A stretch of 64,000 nucleotides of DNA, from the NCBI GenBank assembly GCA_965637545.1, contig OZ281495.1:32364001-32428000 (forward strand), written 5' to 3'. The stretch comes from Phallusia mammillata. Lineage: Eukaryota. Position numbers and translations under genes: made by a program. Shown here piece by piece: positions 16,341 to 51,400 of the stretch (position 1 is its first letter; each line of letters starts with the position of its first letter). The notes under the pieces are model-generated. The model was not told the origin of the DNA and did not search any database. It saw only the letters and a list, made by a program, of their open reading frames with translations.

Positions 16341-16356
16341 ATTCTATTTGAATAAG
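16341..16356 (+). other. Exact copy of the Ciona-type 16-nt spliced leader (ATTCTATTTGAATAAG), no GT donor; SL relic candidate
   Basis: 16/16 match to the SL sequence as I recall it; followed by AAATCG; in Meis intron 6, antisense to Meis. Confidence 0.6.
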
Positions 16357-19300
16357 AAATCGATGATTTTGTTTTTTGCAAGCCATATGCACATACCTGT
16401 ACGAATATACATTTATTTAATTCATTAAGGCAACTACTAGGACATAGAATTTGTTCAACAAAAGTGTTACTACACAAAGTTGTAGGAACACTGACTCAAA
16501 AATAAGCGTTGTAAGACACTTTGTTGCCAAAGCAGCCAAACTCGATATCGATTTAAACGGTTTTTATGCAAAGGATTTGAATTGAATAGATTTCGAACCA
16601 AGGTTTTAACCGCAAGCAATTCGTGAAGCTAGTGCGAACTTGGCTCCATAAGAGAGCTGCATAGGAAACGGCCTTGTCGTAAAATTGACAAAATATCGAG
16701 TTTTCTTATCAGCCTGAACGATCTTATACCCGGGCCGATAACGCAGCGCAAAACGGCGGGCATCGTAACAAGTAAACCTGCCTGCAATATGGGTGGCCTT
16801 ATATCAGCACCTGCCCGTGATTCGGCTTCTATGCCAATTTTCCGTAATACAAGTCCGCTCTGACTTATGCTGGACTTGAGCGGATTTCGACCCCCTAGAA
16901 GCAAATCAGTTTTACGTTTGAAATCCAACGCAAAAGCGAATTCGATAACACGATTTTTTCATTAAAATCGACATTTTTAATAGCAGGGAAGACATTTTAG
17001 CGCTCGATTTAAGAATAGGACGCTTTATCTTTGTGTGTGGCAAGGTTTTTTGTGTTCAAAAAAAAAAAATTGTGACAATGTGTTGACTTTTAAGTACTTA
17101 TTTGAACTTGATGTAACAAAAATGTAAAACATTTTAAACCAAATGCCTCAAGTAAATGGAAACCATTGTTTCACAAACCTAAAAAAAGTGTTTTAAGGTT
17201 TAACTTTCACAAGTTTTTTTCTGCATTTAGATTAAGCCTGTTGTCGGACGTTTAATTGCATTTGGTGATGTCAGCTTCTAAACGGGGCCAAGAGAGGAAA
17301 AACGCCAAGCTCTTTCACAGGTAATTATCGCTTTAGGCTGCTATCAAAACAATGTTGAAGTGCAGTGGGATGGCACTGAGTGAAAACGAACAAAGGTTGT
17401 GGATTAAAAATGCGCGGAGGTTTCAATATTTCATCGAATGTTTAAGCGATGCTATCTCGTGTTTAACTCAGGCGCGTATTGTGGCCCTTGCTGGATGATG
17501 CATAAAACATAACGTTTACGGGCAGGGAATAAGCGGCTGGAAGCTGATGTATGAATATTGGCAATCGGTGAAAAACCTTTGTCAACTTGTGTCATAAATC
17601 ACAGGCGCTGAAACTCAAATATCGAAACTACATAACTTTCTTTGCTGTGCTGTTCCTTTTGATGGGAATTATCGTGCACGTAGCAAGAGTTATACCACAT
17701 TTACATTATACCTTGCATCAGAATGCACAACACTTTATATCAGCTTAAGAAAACATTGGCACAAGATTTTTGAAAGAGCTTTTTATCGTTAGCCATTTGC
17801 CATGCTACTTTTACGTTGCCAGTGACAGAACAGTCGTGATCACGTGGCTGAGGGTGTGCTACGCCCTGTCATCGAACCCAGCGTGCCCGGGTAACTGCAG
17901 TTTGCGTGTAAACAACCACATCAGTATTTCCGACAGGTTTTTTTGCCTAATTAATTGCCAACATCCCTTCACCAGCGCTGAGGGTTTCAGGGATGCTTAC
18001 AAATACACAAACAACATAGGTTGGGAGGGGCAACATCCGGACACCTGTCACGATGGCACGTGACTTTAAAAACGATGCTGATTGGTTCACTCCCTTAAGT
18101 TTCAAAACAATGTAAATTTTAACATTTTCAACATGACTTTGTCATCAACTGGGATAAGTCGAAAAGACGCGCAATAAAACAGGGATTTAAGAATGAACGC
18201 AAAACTGCCATAATTTATTCCCCGCTCTAAACCGCAGAACACTAAGAACGAAATGAATCAAGTCTGTTTCTTCACTATAAATATTGACAGAATTTTGCGA
18301 TTGATTCTTCAAGAAGAGATCAGGGGACTTTTCATAATTTGATTCTGTTAACTCGGTTTACGCCGGCAATGTATGGGTTTTGCGCAAGGAAGACTTGAAA
18401 GCCTGCGTCGGCTTGTTCTAAGGTTTTCGAGACGATTTTTCGAATGCATCACGCCCTGAGCAAACCTATGTTACGATAAGAGCAGGCGCATCGCGCGTCG
18501 GACGCTTAAAACAATCGCTTAGCTGGCGCTTATATCCTTGCCGGTAAATATTTGGCCGCGTATATTGGTATAAAAGGGAATCAATAAAAACAAACTTTGT
18601 TTTAGGCGCAGGCGGTCGGTTCGTCGTGGCAACGTTCGCTTATTCGATCGGCTCTTATTGGCCGAACACTCCAACTGCTAGTTAGATCAGAGAACGCGCG
18701 GCTTATTCAAAGGAACAATTAATGATTGTCGGAGACTGGGGGGAGGGGGGCGGTCCAAAACGTCCCGTGTCGCGAAACAGACAAATATTGATACTTGTAT
18801 AACGCTCGATGTACATAAGTGTATGCTCTGGTGCCATAAAATAATGCGAGGCAAGGTTTCTGTTGTTGATTTGTCGCTATTATTAACGGCGCTTTGAATT
18901 GAGACTTGCTCTGACTTGCTTTGCTAATGAATTTGCGTCTTGATCAGGCGAGTATTGAAGGCAATAACATGTAATGACTTGGACTTCACTCACTATAAGT
19001 AAACGTAGAGGCAATATTACCGGAACTTGTAAGTAACAAAGGCCGATCTGTTGGTGCGACGTGTTTGCTGGAAATTGAACGTGTTTTGTTTTACTAAAAT
19101 GGTGAAATAACAATAGTAAATCAATGCTTGCGAAAATAACTAAGCCAGAAATAGTTCTTTATAGGAAACAAAATTTAATCATGTTGAAATTATTAATCAC
19201 TTTTCCAAATAGAATCCAGTGATAAGAGTCACTCTTGACAAAATCCCAATACTCTTCTGTCTACTTTGTCTATTTCACAACACAGTCCATTATAAAGCTA

Positions 19301-21614
19301 GTTTAGCAACGATGTGACTTTGTGCTTCGAAAGTGCGAACAACCCATCGGTCAATGTCCTCTGCAAAGCCTCGTTTGCGGTTCGGGAGAGCGCAAGCATC
19401 CAGCGATGGTTTCTCTGTCTGTTGGCATCGTACAGAGCTGAGCGGTTATCTAAGTTTGGCGCAGTTAAATCAACAGCAGGATTATGGAAAGTGGGTTGAG
19501 ATGATAACTCGGTCTTTCACTCGTAGAGACTTTCCACAAAATCCTGACTGCTTGCATTACATTCAAAGGTAATGTTTCTAACAGCCAAACTAACGCCCAA
19601 GAACTTGGAAGGCCACAAAACTGCTGATTTGCTGTCTAAATCTTCTTCTACTTCTACTCAACCAATACTTGTACTGATGATGCTTGAAGCGAGATATATA
19701 AATATCTCAAAATCTTAAGGACGAATGACTCGATGTTTTTTTCATAAACTTAACACAACCAAGATTCGTAACTAGATCAACGATGACGATAAACGCTCCT
19801 TGGTCAATTTGTGTATGTTTAAATGGAGAAATACATATGTGACTTTTGGCATTTAACAAATAACCTTGTAAAACTGCTTGCGTTTGCAACATGTATGCTG
19901 GCTTGTGGTGGGAACTTCGACACCATGAGGTGGAGTATTGCGTAAGCTCGACTTAAGGTCGGTGACATATTGCGTTGCGTGATTGGCGCAACCGCCCAGA
20001 CGACGTAATTAGCGGAGCTATGATATACGACTTTGTCCACGTCGTGTAAGTTATTTGTACGGCGATCTTTACGATATTTGAACAAGACAAGGCGGGTTAG
20101 TTGTGCCGCTACCGCCTTTTGTTTGTCAGCCATTCCACAAATTGATGCAATACGCGCGATGCTTGCCGATAATGTTTGATGTCCCTCCTCAGAAATCGAT
20201 CCAAGAACGTCGACATTATGTTGCTACTGTGATGTTACAAAGACGAAAGCTTCCAAACGCGATTTTTATCAAAATTCATGAAAATCAAATGCATAAAGAA
20301 CGAAGTTCCATATTAGACTACCACCGTTTTGAGATAAATTACGAAAACTTCTCGATTTCATTGTGACGTCACTATATAATCAACTGATCTTCTGCGTTTT
20401 TTAAATTTTAATCACTTCGATTTTGTTTGGCAATTTTAAGTTTTTTGGTCGCGCGTCTTATTGTCGCGTCACAATGTTCGACGCCATTTTATTACAATTA
20501 TGACTCTTTACACAAACAATTGTAAAACGTCACCTTATGACGCGGGCGTTGAACCGACGCAAAAAAAACAAAAACAAGTTTGTTACCATCAAAGACCAGC
20601 AAGTAATATAAAAAAGGTGGACCACTTTCTATGCTATCAGTGCCTATGTTTATCATGTAACGAAACATTTTAAAGTTATTACATATCTGTCACCAAATGT
20701 TGCAAGACACCACTATGTGTTTATAACTGGCAACGAAATACAACCATAAGCCAATAGCCAACATAAATGTGCCAAGTTTGCGTTCTAACAAACTGAAATT
20801 GTGTTACAGGACATGGAAGGGTGGAGATATATCAGTAGTCTGCAAAGTCAAGTGCAACACAGGAAATGTCATTCTTACAAGGAACCCCACAAAGCGAAGC
20901 AATTAGATTAAGGTAAAAAAAGAAACTGATTTGATTTCGAAATTGATGCGACCCCTGGAGTTTTTCCCTTTGGACTTAACTTAGCAATATCGCCATTGCC
21001 ACGACACACAGGCAGCTTTATTGTGTCGCTGAGCTTTTTCTGGAAATCAAACAATGACAGAGCGGCTTCTTTAATTACTTTTTGCCGCCGATATATCATG
21101 CGTGCGTTCAGCCAACTTCAAACTTAATATTTTGCCATCAAATACTGGCAGCCGTAAATCGTACGGCAGCTTTAATCAAAGCCGTATACCGAACGGCGCG
21201 CTGCTTGGATTTACGGTTGCCGACAAAATGTTTTTGGTCTTGTTGAGATGTTGACGAAAGACGAGTTAAGTCGATCGTAAATCTTGGAAATAACCCGATG
21301 GAAAAATCATTCTGGAATCTTCAAATAGCGGGAATTTTTGCTATTTGCGTTGCAAGTGTTGTTTGACAGATAGCGGATAGAAATAATACAACACACCCAT
21401 CGTAAAAAGCTACCAATATTTTTCTGTCACACCTTTCCAAATCGAAACATGCGGCCAAATGTTTTACCAAAAACTTTGGTTCAACTTTTAAAAACAAGAC
21501 AAAAACAACGTAATCTTAAAAAATCTGAATATTTTCGAGAACCAACCAACAACCTACATGAGCTAACTAATAAGTGTTATTGTGGCAAAACAATGGAATA
21601 ATTCTAGTTCCCAC

Positions 21615-30966: not shown

Positions 30967-31117
30967 GCTTAGACGAAGACAAAACTGTAGTTGTGACAAC
31001 AACTTGGCGAAATAAAGCATTAAAATATACAAACTAAACCACTACTGGGAAGTGTGGAAATAAAACCGATTTCAACTTTTTTAGCTTATACTTTGAAACA
31101 ATTTAATTTGTACTCAC

Positions 31118-31407
31118 GTGTAAATTGCATCTTTATCTCCTTTGATAGCCATTCTGTCGGAATCGTTTAGTCTTTCTTCAATAGCAGTAGAATTTCCGGG
31201 GCCTTGACTCGTGTGCATAGGTTGCATAGCGTGAGGTGTTACAGGTCCACTGGCACTGTAGTTTGACGGCCCGTGAGGAAGATGAGAGATCGGCGGCATA
31301 GAGCGACTCAAATCCCCGCCGTATAAACCGGCTGAGCCTGATGTCGACGCGGTAATATCCCGAATTTCGGGCATGCCTCCGAAATGTGCCATCGTGTCGT
31401 CGTATTG
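31118..31407 (-). CDS. Meis: Meis exon 2 (QYDDTMAHFGGMPE...IKGDKDAIYT)
   Basis: Acceptor ttttctccggcag, donor AC|GTGAGT (phase 2), 290 nt. YDD..H.GGM and DKDAIY are Meis N-terminal motifs. Confidence 0.95.
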
Positions 31408-31610: not shown

Positions 31611-31628
31611 ACATGTGGCAGCTGCCAT
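31611..31628 (-). CDS. Meis: Meis coding exon 1 (MAAATC)
   Basis: ATG in AAACATGG context, 18 nt, then a consensus GTGAGT donor (phase 0). Joins in frame to QYDD of exon 2, matching the very short first coding exon of Meis genes (MAQR|YDD). A different first exon cannot be excluded. Confidence 0.75.
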
Positions 31629-44924: not shown

Positions 44925-47851
44925 AGAGCCGGGACGAAAGTTCGGAGGCAACTCGTCGCCTGTTTAAGCGAGCGATCGCAATTACCCGAAACGAACTGGG
45001 GCGATAATGGTTTTGGAACAACGAACAATGCCCTACGCCATGTTTGCAAACAACCACTCAAATTTCACGAATTTGTCATCAAGTTTCCACTGATTTGAAA
45101 TCTTATTTTTAGACAACATTTTCGTTACACATAAGGACCCACATCCAGTTTTTTTTTTACAAGACAAACACTTCGACAACATTTCATTTATTAGTTCGTT
45201 AATAATTACCCAGACATAGTAATTTTTCTTGACAAAAAAAATTGTCCTCACATAAAAATGATTTTCTACGTCGATCTCTCATTTACACCTTCCAGCATTA
45301 ACAAATAACCCCCGAAACTAACCGCAGTTTCATTTTACTTGGGCGAAGTCAAGGAGATTTTACCGCACACAGCAATATTGCCTTTATCGTGACAAAGTAT
45401 GGTAATAAAAACTGGCGAAGCAAGCCTAGGGAGTCATCACGTTGTGTGGGCTCGAGCTAAACGCACAGCAAGTGTTGGCGCAACAGAAATGACCATAAAA
45501 CTGTGTCACACTCTCGTCTCCGATGGCAGGCTCACAACAAACTCGAAACAGCGATTACTTTGATGATGCCAGGGCCAAAATAAACGTCGATTTTCTGGCT
45601 CACATTAGTTGAGGTGTTCGCTTTGCATTCCTCTGGTGCTTCGAACGCTGAGCAATTATCCTAATAGTTGTGTTGGAGCCGGCGCGTTCGAAAATTGATT
45701 ATTTATTCAAGGCTCGCGCGAGAGGGGTGGTCTCGTTCTACGGCGTGTGATACAATGCAGTCGAAAACCAACGCGCGATGTTGACGCCATTTTCCCCATT
45801 GTGACGAATCAATGATACGCGATGGTTAAGTTCGAAACACGGCGTCGTCGTCGACTACACATCGCGGCTGCGCGGAGACTAAACTCATAGAAATTAGCGG
45901 CTGATCTTGAGTGACTGCTTCCTTGTTTCGTCACCAAATATTCTGGAATCAGATAAAAAGCGTCGCGCGCCCGATCAAGGCACTTGTCACGTCACAATGT
46001 CGTGACGACACAATCGCTTGGATCTTGAGTGGACCAATCAGCGATAAGCTAAGACGAGAATCTGGGAATATTTGCGCGAAAACTGTTGCGCGGTTTCGGT
46101 AACTTTCTCCTGCCAGGATTATAACGCGCTTGAAATTGTTCTGCGACCGCCAATGCACGGAGCAGCATGATAGAAAAGTTTGATGTATAAAGTCACAAAA
46201 CCGCGAAAGGAATTTGACCCAAGTCCATGGAAAAATTATGTTAAAAACGCTGCAAAAACGACCCCAGCATAACCCATATGCTTTCTGTGAGTTACCTTGT
46301 TAAGCCTAATTTAACTGGTGACATGAGCAAGAATAAAAAAACATGAAGCCACATTTTTCACTGGAACACTATATACGGATATGTTCAATACAGTAAGGCA
46401 CGTCGCTTTTTTCGTATATTTGGGCCGTTATTTTCATCATTAAGATTATCATTATTTTACCATTTCCAAACAAAAATATAAGAAGTAAAAGCTTCCTTTT
46501 CTTGGTGTTCTTTTCCACTTAAACAAAAAACAAATGAGCAAAGCATAAAACGGCATGAAAGAATTTCGAAGTTGTTTTGTCTTGAGTCTAAAGCAGCCAC
46601 AATTTGTAGCAGAAGCACATTATAAAGTTGTTGATCGTGGGCTCGTGTGATCACTTTCACCACAAAGTGGAAAATCAAACGATTTCTCCTTTTAGAAAAT
46701 TCTTTACTTCGGTCAAATGAAGTTCTCGCGGCCAAATAATTCACATATACCCGCAAATTATCTTATAAACGTGACCAAACGTTTGAGGTGCGACTGCCGG
46801 GCACTGCCATGTGTTTACGATACATCGATGAGAATACCTTCAGTACCATGTCATTGATCTTGCGGTGCGAACAACACAGGTTAGATTCGATTTTTCCAAA
46901 CCAGTCGGAAATTACGATCGAAATTTTCTATATTACCTCTGCTAGGTGCTGTAAAAACAACATGTTTTAAATCAGACAATCTTTACACAAGGTATTAAAA
47001 CTTCAAGTAAGTTTCACTAAAACAATAGCATTGTTAACATGCACACTCCTTTCACTCTTTTTGTGTCCAGAACAGTAAAACCGAAATATTGATTTTTACT
47101 TTAGCAAAATAAAATTGCAAATATTTTGCAAAGAACTATGTGATTTTGTTGTGTTCTTGTTTTGTTCTGGGCACAAACACGTTTTGAAGTGCTAAGACAT
47201 TCCCATACAATCGAAAACTTTCAATTATTAAGTACCTCAAACAACAATAAAACTTCCAGAGTATTGCCCAACCATTCAAACAGTGAAAGGAATTTATTAC
47301 AACATAATTCTTGTCTCAACAAATCAGCAAGAGCTGTGAGGCAAATCATTCATGCTCACACTACACCAACAGAACAGAGGTTTTTCACTTGAGTTATTAT
47401 TCCCCAAATTGGCAAATTTCACATGAATGAATTTTATTAAGCAAAATTTTGTCAGTAAGCGAATTGTGTCAAGAAACCTTGTGACAAATTTTTTCATTAT
47501 GAGAACTGCCAAAGGTTAGATAAAAGGAAATGGCTGTAAACCTATGGAATTGTATTACTTATAAGTTTTGTTCTGTTCCTGTTTTAATGCTTTTACAACC
47601 GACCTGAACATAATCAGACTTAATTGTCGTTTGAAAGAAGGTCAAATGACAGAAAGTTGAATTAAAAATTCATTATTGGCGCAAAGTTTGACCTTGACTA
47701 GAAGGTCACGAAACGTCAGGCATAACGCCAGAATGTGTTCTGAATCTTTGCAATATCTAATCAAACCTGACCTTAAAATGCATGCCATATTTGTCTCATA
47801 AAGACATCACCGCAAAATTTTTATATAATGGACAGGGAATTGGCTGTAGAT

Positions 47852-48299
47852 CAGCGCTTCCCAACCGGTGGTCCGCGGCCCACTGGTGGGCCGCGACGTT
47901 CTTTCTCGTGGGCCGCGAAACTTGTCAAACTATTATCATACCAAAATAGAAGTGTAAAAGTTATACAGTTCGTGTGAACATCGTTTCAAGTTTAACTATA
48001 TTATCAAATAAAAACATATTACTCACTATAAAAGCCGCATGTGGTTTTAAGTTAAAAAAAACTTTTATTACACACCCAAGCTGCGATTGTCACGTCACAA
48101 CAGTACTTGTATTACTTGTAAAATCTTGATGCCAGAACTCTCTTTGTTAGCTTCATTTGGACCCAGAACACGTCAAATACGGTTTCGTAAAGGCAAGAAG
48201 TAAATTTGAGGCAAAAGTACAATGTGTTAAAACAGTGGTCCGCCAAAAAATTATTTTTTCAAAAGTGGGCCGTGAGCTGGAAAAGGTTGGGAAGCACTG
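47852..48299. mobile_element. Non-autonomous hAT (Charlie/Buster-type) MITE, 448 bp
   Basis: TIRs CAGCGCTTCCCAACC / GGTTGGGAAGCACTG; 8-bp TSD CTGTAGAT at 47844-47851 and 48300-48307; subterminal GTGGGCCG/GTGGTCCG repeats. Confidence 0.95.
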
Positions 48300-48373
48300 C
48301 TGTAGATGATAGTAACCTTAACTCTGGTTATAGGTAAGTCATTTATTATCGGCGTTAGACGAATCATTTTCAT

Positions 48374-48419
48374 ATTCGACAAAACATGATAAACCCTGAA
48401 TACCTTATTCAAATAGAAA
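48374..48419 (-). ncRNA. SL-RNA-like orphon or SL-like exon with intact donor (TTTCTATTTGAATAAG|GTATTC...)
   Basis: 15 contiguous SL bases (48404-48418) followed directly by GT at the expected SL junction. No canonical Sm site recognised; the 3' boundary is nominal. Confidence 0.4.
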
Positions 48420-51400
48420 AGATTACTTGAACCTTGTCACCTTAATATGTGACTGCAATGTCATGTAAAAGACGAGCAACCGCAGAAAATATGTAAAAAC
48501 CCATCTTAACTGTAGTTCCGAACGAGTTGAGAGTTTGGGCTAAGTGTCTGTTGGGCAACTTACAAGAACCTCACATAACGTATGGCTGCATATGCGGTTT
48601 TCTGTCGGGTCGGATAAACAGCTTTGCCTCGCTTGATTACAAGGTTTTAAATGTTAAGAGTTCATTGGCATAGATTCTGTGGTGAGTGTGGCCACTGTCG
48701 GCGTCAGAGATATAACTGCAATTAAAACGATGACAAGGGCATTTAGAGGTCACCAGTTAGCTCCCACGATGCACTTTTGTAACTTATTTGCATGCATAGA
48801 AACAAAATCTGACGATACTTTAAAGTACCCACTAAAACTTTGCTCAAAACCAGTGTCAAAGGAATTTAGCACAAGTTAAAAAATATTCGATTTTTTTATC
48901 TTGGCAACGACTATTTTTTATCTACTCAATGAAAACAACTTTTAACCCACAACATTAATCAAGGCTTCACCACACAATAATTGAAACAACAAAGCTAAAA
49001 TGGAAACCAAATGACACACACTGCGAAGGCTAAACACAGTAGCTTAACAGCAAACAAAGTGCGAGGTGGTTACTTAAACTTAGACATTTTGTCTCGAAAC
49101 CAGACTTTTATGTTGACACAATAGCAAATTGGCAATTTTGCTCTCAGCGAACTAACTGTTGTTTTGCCAAAATTAAGTCTTAATTGTTTCGAAAAAAAGT
49201 TTGCCATTTTGTACAAAAAATTTCAAACATGTCATTAGAAGATAGAATGAATATGAAAGTGAAACAAATTCTCTTTGCATTTTCAGCATCACAGTCTGGC
49301 TTTGACTCCGGTGACGTTAATTTTATGTGGATTGTCGCTTAGATGGAAGATGCGACTTGCCTGTTGGGAAATCACTTAAGGTAAGATGGAAGGGGGGAAA
49401 TGCGTGATTATGTTTCACCTTTCAACCCCGGCTGGCGTTGCACTTGTGTATTGATCGATCGCGTCCAACACAAATGCGCTTTAGCCAGGAAAACTACAAA
49501 CATCGATCAGACGATCAGCTACACGGGAAGGTTTTTGCGATTAACCTGACTCTGAAACTCGACGGGTTTTCGCAAAAAGCTAAACGACTCCACTTTCGAT
49601 CGATAACTAAATGTCAGTGAAACGATCTGGCCGCGCACCTAACGCCTTCCGTGTGTGTTTAAGGCACTCTCCTGTCGTCCCATAAAGCCTTATTGTGTCG
49701 TTAAATCGCACAATAAATTCCACTTGTCCGTCAACAATCCCCAGGTAACACGTGATTGCCATTTGGGCGCCAGCTTTAAATCGAGACCCGAAGTTTAAAT
49801 TTTATTACAGATTGATGCAAAACCTTTGAGATTAAACAAAAATACGCAATCTCTTAGGTAATATATCCTTATTTTTTAGAATAAATCGCTTTCACACAAG
49901 TCAAGCTTCAAAAGAATCTGCCTACCACCATTTTCAAACGTGTAGTTTTATTTGAGTTAAAACCTGCATTTCCATTTTTTTGCAAACGCTAAATTTCCGC
50001 TTAGCAGCTAATTGTCGCTAATAAGACAAAATTGCAAGTTAATGCAAAGCGTTTTCAGTCAAAGGTAAAAAAAAATTTGGTTTCCAATTCTAAATTACAA
50101 ACTCGGAAGGTTGTGAAATGTAGATCAACAGTTTGCAAAATTTTTGCTCCCTTGCTCCGTTTTATCAGCTAAGTTTATGTTTGAAACATGTAAAACCCTG
50201 ATTAAGCATTCAAAACAATCAGTGTCACTTAATCTGAAAACACAATGTTGGTGAGGTTCAACCAATCAGGGACAGCATCTCGGTGTGCAATATACACACG
50301 CACGTGGTAATGTGTGGAGAAACACGTGTTGGCTCAAGGTCACCATGTTCCCAAGGTCAGAAAAGCTTGTGCAGCGACATAAGGTGATGCCTCGTCTAAT
50401 GCGACTCCTGTGTAGCTGTCGGATTAAGCTCAACCCGCCAGATTCAGCATTTTGATAAATAACAACGTCTAGTTTTAATCAAATAAACTCTGCTCGCCTT
50501 CGTAAAGCAATGTGCCAGAAAATGGTCCTTATCGGCTCTGAGTAAAAGGATGCGAAAATTTTTGCGCATTTTTTAAGGTCTTCGTTTGTTGCGAGTCAAG
50601 CTTACAACGATTGAAGGAAAATCGTTGACGTATGTCCCGGGTAAGCCCCCGCTGTCCAGGTAAAGGGCAATTTTTTTTTGCATTGAACACAACTTTCAAA
50701 TCAGTTAAAACGAACTTAAATCGCTATTTAAGCGGATTTGTATTAAAACGCTCACTTTTTGATTTTTTTTCTTCTACTTTACGATTTAATTTGCCATATT
50801 CAGAACAAAATGTAAAAAAAGCAGACAGTTTTTGACACGTTTTGACAAAGCCAATAATATGATTAGAGCAAGCACCAGTAGTATTTTACTGTTATTTGTA
50901 ACGGCGAGCAACAATCTTTCCTACAACTTCGCGAATAAACGTTGTGATTGAATTAAAACAATTCAAGTAAATGCAACCCTAAACTTTAAATACGGATCAG
51001 TCGTACTTGTTTTTTAAGTCAGATTCTTGTCATTTTTTATTATTTAGCGAACTGATATCTAACCACCATTATGAAATAACTACACACATGCTCCTAGTTG
51101 TATAATAAACAAACAAAAATATTTCATAATGAATTTTTGTAATCTTAATGTTTAGGCCGATTGGTTGCATATTTAGGATTCCTAGCATTATGACCTCACA
51201 GACGCCAAACACTGACCTGTGTGTCGTCATATTAGCATAACCCCTGACCGTACGAAGATTTGTCTAAATTGTGCTGCTTCGGCGTCTCCTGTTGGACGTT
51301 AATAGGATTACCCGCAGTGGTTTGTCCAAATTATTCGCCAGACAAACTCAGGAGGGTCCGCATGAAGCGTTGTGACAGTGACGTATCGGGGTGTGTGATT

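What the first reader, a model, noticed from the sequence alone, without database searches (positions are those of the whole stretch)
48374..48419. Spliced-leader-like exon with an intact GT donor on the Meis strand, ~17 kb upstream of Meis
Seen: the minus strand reads TTTCTATTTGAATAAG|GTATTCAGGG, i.e. 15 contiguous bases of the ascidian SL followed by GT exactly where an SL RNA has its donor. The junction sits in a small hairpin (TGAATA-AGG-TATTCA). It lies ~100 bp from a hAT MITE and is not in a tandem array. Known: Ciona mRNAs receive a 16-nt leader ATTCTATTTGAATAAG by trans-splicing. A rough hand estimate of a chance 17-nt match in this window is about 1e-4 or less under an independent-base model. 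Inference: either a dispersed SL RNA orphon, or a locally encoded leader exon that could be cis-spliced onto Meis and mimic trans-splicing. The first base differs from the SL (T for A), which would mark such transcripts. Caveats: this species' SL is unknown and I see no canonical Sm site.
Basis: partly seen in the sequence, partly recalled or inferred. Interest (0 to 1): 0.8.

Follow-up and report, generated by a model that had tools for sequence, protein, structure and literature searches.

The report
Orphan spliced-leader copy upstream of Meis
A 15-base copy of the sea-squirt spliced leader followed by GT does lie 17 kb upstream of Meis, but it is one of roughly a thousand leader copies scattered through this genome and shows no sign of being a working leader gene or a Meis exon.

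Summary
Observation confirmed. Window 48404-48418 (-) reads TTCTATTTGAATAAG, preceded by T and followed by GTATTCAGGG. The junction sits in a 6-bp hairpin, 104 bp from a 448-bp hAT-type MITE and 17 kb upstream of Meis on its strand.

The species does use this SL. At least 2,671 tandem 553-bp units on another contig encode ATTCTATTTGAATAAG|GTAAGCATCATACTCC, then a hairpin and a U-tract. The genome also holds roughly 700-1,100 dispersed SL copies, against about 2 expected by chance. Sixty-eight are non-A + SL15 + GT, and 41 carry the window's exact 18-mer. Many head retro-elements: intact LINEs, short CTGATGA...GAAA repeats, and an intron-less mRNA retrocopy. Others, like this one, have unique flanks.

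The window copy matches the true SL RNA gene for only 18 nt. It has a weak donor and folds no better than shuffles. It has no paralogue, ORF, duplication or tail, and no RNA contig covers it. Meis has its own plausible ATG exon near 31.6 kb.

Verdict: an orphan, most likely inert SL relic. The GT is probably incidental, since about 13-15% of dispersed copies have GT. The scan had already found SL-headed LINEs and SL-hammerhead repeats elsewhere in this genome. Low interest.

The parts
48404..48418 (-). 15-nt copy of SL bases 2-16 (TTCTATTTGAATAAG). Base 48419 is T instead of the SL's A.
   Evidence: This is one of 4,176 exact copies in the genome.
48401..48403 (-). GTA directly after the SL copy. 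Identity to the true SL RNA gene (…AAG|GTAAGC…) ends here, for 18 nt in all. The donor context AAG|GTATTC lacks the +4 A and +5 G of the real gene.
   Evidence: Sixty-eight loci have non-A + SL15 + GT, and 41 have the same 18-mer TTTCTATTTGAATAAGGT.
48397..48411 (-). 6-bp hairpin TGAATA-AGG-TATTCA with the exon/GT junction in its loop.
   Evidence: The 62-nt and 102-nt folds are no better than shuffles (z -0.76 and -0.33).
48301..48400 (-). Unique sequence between the SL copy and the MITE. It has no paralogue, no ORF, and no similarity to the SL RNA intron, LINE 5'UTRs or the CTGATGA-core repeat.
47852..48299 (.). 448-bp hAT-type MITE with an 8-bp target-site duplication ATCTACAG (48300-48307 and 47844-47851). 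It is unrelated to the SL copy.
   Evidence: Diverged copies in RNA-type contigs end at 48299/48300.
16341..16356 (+). Second SL copy in the window, 16/16, followed by AAATCGATGATT with no GT. It is antisense inside Meis.
31117..31407 (-). First recognisable Meis coding exon (QYDDTMAHFGGM…KGDKDAIY). It begins at a canonical acceptor, tattttctccggcag|CAATAC.
   Evidence: The exon limits are inferred from sequence only.
31611..31628 (-). Putative ATG-bearing Meis exon end (ATGGCAGCTGCCACATGT|GTGAGT). It is in frame with the next exon, so Meis needs no leader from 17 kb upstream.
   Evidence: This is inferred from sequence without RNA support.

Best explanation
The site is an orphan, most likely inert DNA copy of the species' spliced leader. 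It is one member of a genome-wide population of roughly 700-1,100 dispersed SL copies.

What is shown: that population is fed by reverse transcription of SL-bearing RNAs, namely trans-spliced LINE RNAs, a short CTGATGA...GAAA repeat, and ordinary mRNAs.

What is inferred: at this locus only the leader head can still be recognised (15 nt, or 18 nt counting GTA). It was probably pasted in as the 5' end of such an RNA, or as the 5' end of unspliced SL RNA. The GT after it is either the start of the SL RNA intron or, more likely, incidental.

It is not an SL RNA gene, and nothing shows that it is an exon.
For: 1. The true SL RNA gene is defined. There are 3,179 copies of SL16+GT, mostly at a 553-bp period on contig C3. 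Of these, 2,671 have the intron start GTAAGCATCATACTCC, and none lie on C1 or C2. The unit sequence carries a hairpin and a U-tract.
2. The window copy matches that gene for only 18 nt. The post-SL alignment to the intron scores 2.0 against a null of 2.8 +/- 1.5, and the upstream region is unrelated.
3. Dispersed copies are abundant. The 15-mer occurs 4,176 times against 0 for the reversed control and an independent-base expectation of 2.0. Non-A+SL15+GT occurs 68 times, 41 of them with the window's 18-mer.
4. The mechanism is shown at other copies:
   - Intact LINEs with ORF1 and APE-RT ORF2 begin exactly at the SL.
   - Homology between paralogues starts at SL base 0 to -2.
   - L025 is an intron-less retrocopy whose parent is split by a ~66-nt intron.
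   - L002 is an insert of about 215 bp with a 15-nt SL head lacking the first A, bracketed by a 12-bp duplication.
5. 'SL + unique flank' orphans are common. L020 and L028 are also single copy.
6. There are no functional signs here. No RNA-type contig covers 48301-48434, the folds are not better than shuffles, and no ORF or Pfam remnant lies downstream.
Against: - No target-site duplication, poly(A) tail or parent sequence was found for this copy. The retro-insertion origin is therefore inferred from the population, not shown at this locus.
- A perfectly preserved 15-mer implies a young insert, so a parent exon should be detectable if more than the leader had been inserted.
- The TSD test also failed on the LINE controls, so it has low power.
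- The RNA evidence comes from assembled contigs of small runs. These cannot show starts or short RNAs and cannot prove silence.
- The 6-bp hairpin across the junction is mildly unlikely by chance. I estimate a few per cent, and I did not simulate it.
Confidence: 0.78

Rival explanations
1. A functional dispersed SL RNA gene (orphon) that donates a variant leader beginning with T.
For: SL 15/16 plus GT at the right place. The junction sits in a small hairpin. The same 18-mer recurs 41 times, including four copies at 89-bp spacing on C7:22.68 Mb that I could not inspect.
Against: No similarity to the true SL RNA intron, hairpin, U-tract or upstream region. The donor is weak. The fold is not significant. 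The locus is single copy and not in an array. No RNA contig covers it. True SL genes are confined to arrays on C3 and small contigs.
Confidence: 0.04
2. A DNA-encoded leader-like first exon that is cis-spliced onto Meis and mimics trans-splicing.
For: It lies on the same strand, 17 kb upstream of Meis. GT follows the leader. Acceptors exist at about 31648 and about 31408.
Against: No contig covers it or is joined from it. The donor is weak. Meis has a plausible local ATG exon with a strong GTGAGT donor 200 nt upstream of exon 2. About 145 comparable dispersed SL+GT sites exist genome-wide, so lying near some gene on its strand is expected for many of them.
Confidence: 0.03
3. A chance match with no relation to the SL.
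For: The flanks are unique and no insertion hallmarks were found. About 2 chance 15-mers are expected genome-wide.
Against: About 2 are expected against roughly 700-1,100 dispersed copies observed, and the reversed control gives 0. Other orphans with unique flanks are frequent, far more than chance can supply.
Confidence: 0.04
4. The DNA-encoded leader works as a 3' splice or trans-splice acceptor (a pyrimidine-rich TCTTTTCTATTT followed by AAG) rather than as a donor.
For: The SL is pyrimidine-rich and ends in AG. SL-headed LINEs could regenerate their head this way (inference).
Against: There is no RNA evidence at this locus. This is speculation only.
Confidence: 0.03

Closest known systems
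This species' own SL RNA gene (553-bp tandem unit, contig C3)
   Same: 18 contiguous bases, TTCTATTTGAATAAGGTA, covering exon bases 2-16 plus GTA.
   Different: The first base is T, not A. The intron diverges after GTA, with no CUCC…GGAG hairpin and no U-tract. The upstream 60 nt are unrelated. The locus is single copy and not in an array.
Ciona SL RNA pseudogenes / SL-related dispersed sequences (Yeats et al. [quoted passage not shown]
   Same: A dispersed SL sequence with a GT, outside the tandem repeat and without an Sm motif.
   Different: This is a different species and repeat unit. I could not read the primary paper, so the comparison rests on the secondary citation.
DNA-encoded SL relics at the 5' ends of retroposed genes in dinoflagellates (e.g. 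PMC12014239)
   Same: In this genome the SL likewise marks the 5' ends of retro-copied RNAs. Tandem relic SLs occur (L006, L009, L010, L031) and an intron-less retrocopy exists (L025).
   Different: At the window locus no retro-copied body can be recognised behind the leader.
SL-headed LINEs of this genome (L074-L077)
   Same: They carry the same leader head. One intact LINE (C1:716191) even has the identical 18-mer TTTCTATTTGAATAAGGT.
   Different: No ORF1/ORF2, no 5'UTR similarity and no repeat family follow the window copy.

Membership tests
Ascidian SL RNA gene | 16-nt SL exon ATTCTATTTGAATAAG | tested here: inconclusive
   15/16, with the first base T instead of A. Leader heads of 15 nt also occur on retro-inserts.
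Ascidian SL RNA gene | GT donor immediately after the exon | tested here: met
   AAG|GTATTC. However, +4/+5 are TT against AG in the real gene.
Ascidian SL RNA gene | Intron-like part related to the species' SL RNA (GTAAGCATCATACTCC, hairpin, U-rich Sm-like tract) | tested here: not met
   Alignment score is 2.0 against a null of 2.8 +/- 1.5. There is no comparable hairpin plus U-tract.
Ascidian SL RNA gene | Residence in the tandem repeat unit, or a shared upstream region | tested here: not met
   The locus is single copy. Array-type genes are found only on C3 and small contigs. The upstream sequence is unrelated.
Ascidian SL RNA gene | Expressed as a small capped RNA that donates its leader | not testable with these tools
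   Only assembled contigs of putative RNA runs were available, and none covers the site.
SL-headed retro-insert (LINE, CTGATGA-core repeat, mRNA retrocopy) | Recognisable retro-copied body directly behind the leader | tested here: not met
   No paralogue or parent. No ORF or Pfam hit. No match to model R1. No similarity to 55 other post-SL segments.
SL-headed retro-insert (LINE, CTGATGA-core repeat, mRNA retrocopy) | Target-site duplication and/or A-rich tail | tested here: inconclusive
   No exact duplication of 9 nt or more within 8 kb. The same test failed on the four LINE controls, so it has low power.
5' exon of Meis | Same strand, upstream of the gene, with a splice donor | tested here: met
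5' exon of Meis | RNA joined from 48404 to a Meis acceptor | tested here: inconclusive
   No contig and no joint at the site in 4 runs. Contigs cannot prove absence.

The most novel reading that the evidence does not exclude
The leader copy is a live, DNA-encoded first exon. Transcripts starting just upstream would be cis-spliced from 48404 onto a Meis acceptor (about 31648 or 31408). The resulting Meis mRNAs would look trans-spliced except for a T at base 1. If so, retro-pasted leaders could be recruited as alternative promoter exons.
Probability: 0.03. Interest if true: 0.65.

Novelty: new member of a known kind. Interest (0 to 1): 0.15.

Why it matters
In itself it matters little. It is one more stray leader copy in a genome littered with them.

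It is useful as a caution. In this ascidian an SL 15-mer followed by GT is not evidence of an SL gene or of a hidden exon, because about 145 dispersed sites of that form are estimated to exist. True SL genes can be recognised by their intron, hairpin, U-tract and 553-bp array.

The wider pattern is the interesting biology: host leaders heading LINEs, short repeats and mRNA retrocopies, plus many 'leader-only' orphans. The scan has already reported it on other DNA of this genome.

Tried and rejected
- **Rfam.** The window at gathering thresholds gave no hit. Fifteen loci at E<=1, including a true SL array unit and the CTGATGA-core copies, gave no SL family and no hammerhead. Rfam's silence is therefore uninformative for tunicate SL RNA, and I could not confirm the hammerhead reading.
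- **Decayed member of the CTGATGA...GAAA class.** A sequence-only model (R1) of the post-SL part found nothing in 48300-48403 at E<=10.
- **Head of a LINE.** No ORF1/ORF2 and no Pfam hits downstream.
- **Retrocopy of an mRNA.** No paralogue was found for 48301-48480 or 47300-47851. The first 24 nt after the SL are unique even with 3 mismatches.
- **TSD or tail search.** Negative, but with low power.
- **RNA support.** One read-laying run on 45450-51400 laid only diverged MITE and repeat pieces.
- **Primary papers.** Yeats 2010 and Vandenberghe 2001 are not held.
- **Not done.** I did not inspect the four TTTCTATTTGAATAAGGT copies at 89-bp spacing on C7:22,680,487-22,680,771, or the L025 parent's acceptor. 

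Full report
**1. What is there**

On the minus strand, window 48418->48404 reads TTCTATTTGAATAAG. Base 48419 is T where the ascidian leader has A. Bases 48403-48402 are GT, followed by ATTCAGGG. The small hairpin TGAATA-AGG-TATTCA is the local minimum-energy fold.

A 448-bp MITE lies at 47852-48299, with TIRs CAGTGCTTCCCAACC... and an 8-bp duplication ATCTACAG, so the leader copy is 104 bp from it. Meis is on the same strand:

- The HM-domain exon is at about 23960.
- The homeobox exons are at about 9610 and 7846.
- The first recognisable coding exon (QYDDTMAHFGG...KGDKDAIY) starts at 31407, behind a canonical acceptor.

The window also contains a full 16/16 leader at 16341-16356 (+) without GT, and a 14/16 copy at 19200-19215 (-).

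**2. Does the species use this leader?**

Yes. The 16-mer plus GT occurs 3,179 times, mostly at an exact 553-bp period on contig C3. Of these, 2,671 copies have the intron start GTAAGCATCATACTCC with at most 2 mismatches. They lie on C3 (about 10.97 and 11.11-11.19 Mb) and on at least one small contig. None lie on C1 or C2.

The unit reads ATTCTATTTGAATAAG|GTAAGCATCATACTCCTCGGAGTAACTTTTTTCC... This is a strong donor (AAG|GTAAGC), followed by a 5-bp hairpin and a single-stranded U-tract.

That the leader is joined to mRNAs only at the RNA level is shown by DNA copies of spliced RNAs. L025 is an intron-less copy that begins with the leader. Its parent on C5 matches from about base 5 after the leader and is interrupted by a ~66-nt intron.

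**3. The right background**

The independent-base expectation is 3.3e-5 for the 17-mer in this window and 2.0 for the 15-mer in the whole genome. The genome actually holds 4,176 exact 15-mers, against 0 for the reversed control. The breakdown is:

| Class | Count | Call |
|---|---|---|
| All exact 15-mers | 4,176 | 6 |
| Array-type SL genes | 2,671 | 20 |
| 15-mers not followed by GT | 929 | derived from 6, 8, 60 |
| SL15+GT on C1 and C2 together (70 Mb), no array gene present | 43 | 8, 60 |
| Non-A + SL15 + GT | 68 | 60 |
| The window's exact 18-mer TTTCTATTTGAATAAGGT | 41 | 60 |

This gives about 3 dispersed copies per Mb, or roughly 700-1,100 in all, and about 0.6 SL15+GT per Mb, or roughly 145. 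About 13-15% of dispersed copies happen to be followed by GT. One of the 41 copies of the exact 18-mer is the head of an intact LINE. A 64-kb window is thus expected to hold about 0.2 dispersed leaders and about 0.04 leader+GT sites. The locus is not chance, but it is not rare either.

**4. What the dispersed copies are**

I sampled 59 distinct copies.

(a) *LINEs.* At C1:2615372, C1:716191, C1:990145 and C2:5650823, the leader is followed after 38-107 nt by an ORF1 of 227-258 aa. This ORF1 is coiled-coil, and two copies carry the Pfam Baculo_FP_2nd domain. An ORF2 of 1,043-1,099 aa follows, with RVT_1 in all four and Exo_endo_phos in three. Between diverged paralogues the homology starts at leader base 0 to -2. 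LINE RNAs are therefore SL trans-spliced, and the leader is copied into new insertions.

(b) *A short repeat.* Its form is leader + RAA + CTGATGATGCC-loop-GGCGAAATATA. It has at least 49 exact-motif copies on all eight large contigs, and only 2 of the 49 have GT. L002 is an insert of about 215 bp of this class, bracketed by a 12-bp duplication, whose head is the 15-nt leader lacking the first A. Earlier notes of this scan call these hammerhead-bearing Penelope-like tails. Rfam gave no hammerhead hit in my hands, so I leave that name unverified.

(c) *mRNA retrocopies*, such as L025.

(d) *Tandem or inverted leader relics*, in L006, L009, L010 and L031.

(e) *Orphans.* The 250 nt after the leader in L020 and L028 are single copy.

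**5. Which class is the window copy?**

It is an orphan.

- Bases 48301-48480 and 47300-47851 (beyond the MITE) are single copy.
- The 24 nt after the leader occur nowhere else, even with 3 mismatches.
- The 103 nt after the leader resemble none of the 55 other post-leader segments I hold (best local score 23, null 22.7 +/- 2.5).
- They do not resemble the true SL RNA intron either (2.0, null 2.8 +/- 1.5).
- The model of class (b) finds nothing there.
- No ORF or Pfam remnant follows.
- No target-site duplication or tail was found, though that test also missed the LINE controls.

Identity to the real SL RNA gene is limited to 18 nt, TTCTATTTGAATAAGGTA.

**6. Function?**

Nothing supports it.

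- The donor AAG|GTATTC lacks the +4 A and +5 G of the real gene.
- The 62-nt and 102-nt folds are no better than shuffles (z -0.76 and -0.33), and there is no hairpin plus U-tract.
- In four putative RNA runs of the same species, the only pieces laid near the site are diverged MITE copies ending at 48299/48300. No contig covers 48301-48434, and no joint leaves 48404. These are assembled contigs of small runs, so this is absence of support, not proof of silence.
- Meis does not need a distant leader. About 200 nt upstream of the 31407 exon lies ATGGCAGCTGCCACATGT|GTGAGT. It is in frame and gives MAAATC-QYDD..., which I compare from memory with vertebrate MAQRYDD. A further acceptor-like site lies at about 31648 (sequence inference only).

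**7. Verdict**

The two functional readings, SL RNA orphon gene and cis-spliced Meis leader, are not supported.

The best-supported reading is an inert orphan leader relic, probably the pasted-in 5' end of an SL-bearing RNA. Whether that RNA was spliced or was unspliced SL RNA cannot be told from 18 nt. The GT is most likely incidental.

Dispersed SL pseudo-copies are already described as 'rife' in Ciona (PMC7986045, citing Yeats et al. 2010, which I could not read). This scan has also already reported SL-headed LINEs and SL-plus-ribozyme repeats elsewhere in this genome. I reached the LINE result independently before reading those notes.

Noticed in passing
L074-L077 (G000:C1:2615372, C1:716191, C1:990145, C2:5650823): Apparently intact LINEs in at least three diverged lineages. 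Each has ORF1 of 227-258 aa and ORF2 of 1,043-1,099 aa (RVT_1 in all four, Exo_endo_phos in three). Their 5' ends are exactly the 16-nt (or 15-nt) host spliced leader. Because the leader ends in AG, a DNA-encoded head could itself serve as the next trans-splice acceptor (inference).
   Followed up: yes
G000:C3:10966031-10969380 (-) and 11108338-11189727 (+); L071: The species' SL RNA genes form tandem arrays of a 553-bp unit, with at least 2,671 copies. The array is interrupted by gaps of about 4.7-5.1 kb that I did not inspect.
   Followed up: partly
window 16341-16356 (+): A full 16/16 spliced leader inside Meis, antisense, followed by AAATCGATGATT. That is a degenerate start of the CTGATGA-core repeat, but model R1 does not score it.
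   Followed up: partly
window 19672-19705 (+), extending to about 19760: A leaderless copy of the CTGATGATGC...GCGAGATATA core (R1, E=0.007). It continues into ...ATCTCAAAATCTTAAGG...TTTTTTTCATAAACTTAA, the same repeat as the SL-headed L047. The family therefore exists both with and without the leader.
   Followed up: partly
window 19200-19215 (-): A 14/16 leader-like copy, ATTCTATTTGGAAAAG, followed by TG.
   Followed up: no
L020 (G000:C1:3235461) and L028 (G000:C1:5010337): Exact leader copies whose following 250 nt are single copy in the genome. 'Leader-only' orphans seem common (2 of 3 random singletons, plus the window copy), and no mechanism shown here explains them.
   Followed up: partly
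L025 (G000:C1:4556148); parent G000:C5:12028711-12029017: A leader-headed, intron-less retrocopy of a multi-copy gene. The parent is split by a ~66-nt intron exactly where the copy is continuous.
   Followed up: partly
L010 (G000:C1:2319418), L006, L009, L031: Tandem relic leaders directly 5' of a full leader, plus a ~250-bp head-to-head inverted pair of leader-headed units in L010. This is reminiscent of the recycled SL relics of dinoflagellate retrogenes.
   Followed up: partly
G000:C7:22680487-22680771 (+): Four copies of the window's exact 18-mer TTTCTATTTGAATAAGGT at 89-bp spacing. This could be a small tandem cluster of a T-variant leader unit.
   Followed up: no
genome-wide: Among the 68 sites with non-A + SL15 + GT, the preceding base is T in 41, G in 21 and C in 6. 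T is over-represented and C is depleted relative to base composition.
   Followed up: no
window 31611-31628 (-) and 31407 (-): A probable short first coding exon of Meis (ATG GCA GCT GCC ACA TGT | GTGAGT) lies 200 nt upstream of the QYDD exon's acceptor. An acceptor-like ccttccttag|CACGAAG lies at about 31648 and could be a trans-splice site.
   Followed up: partly
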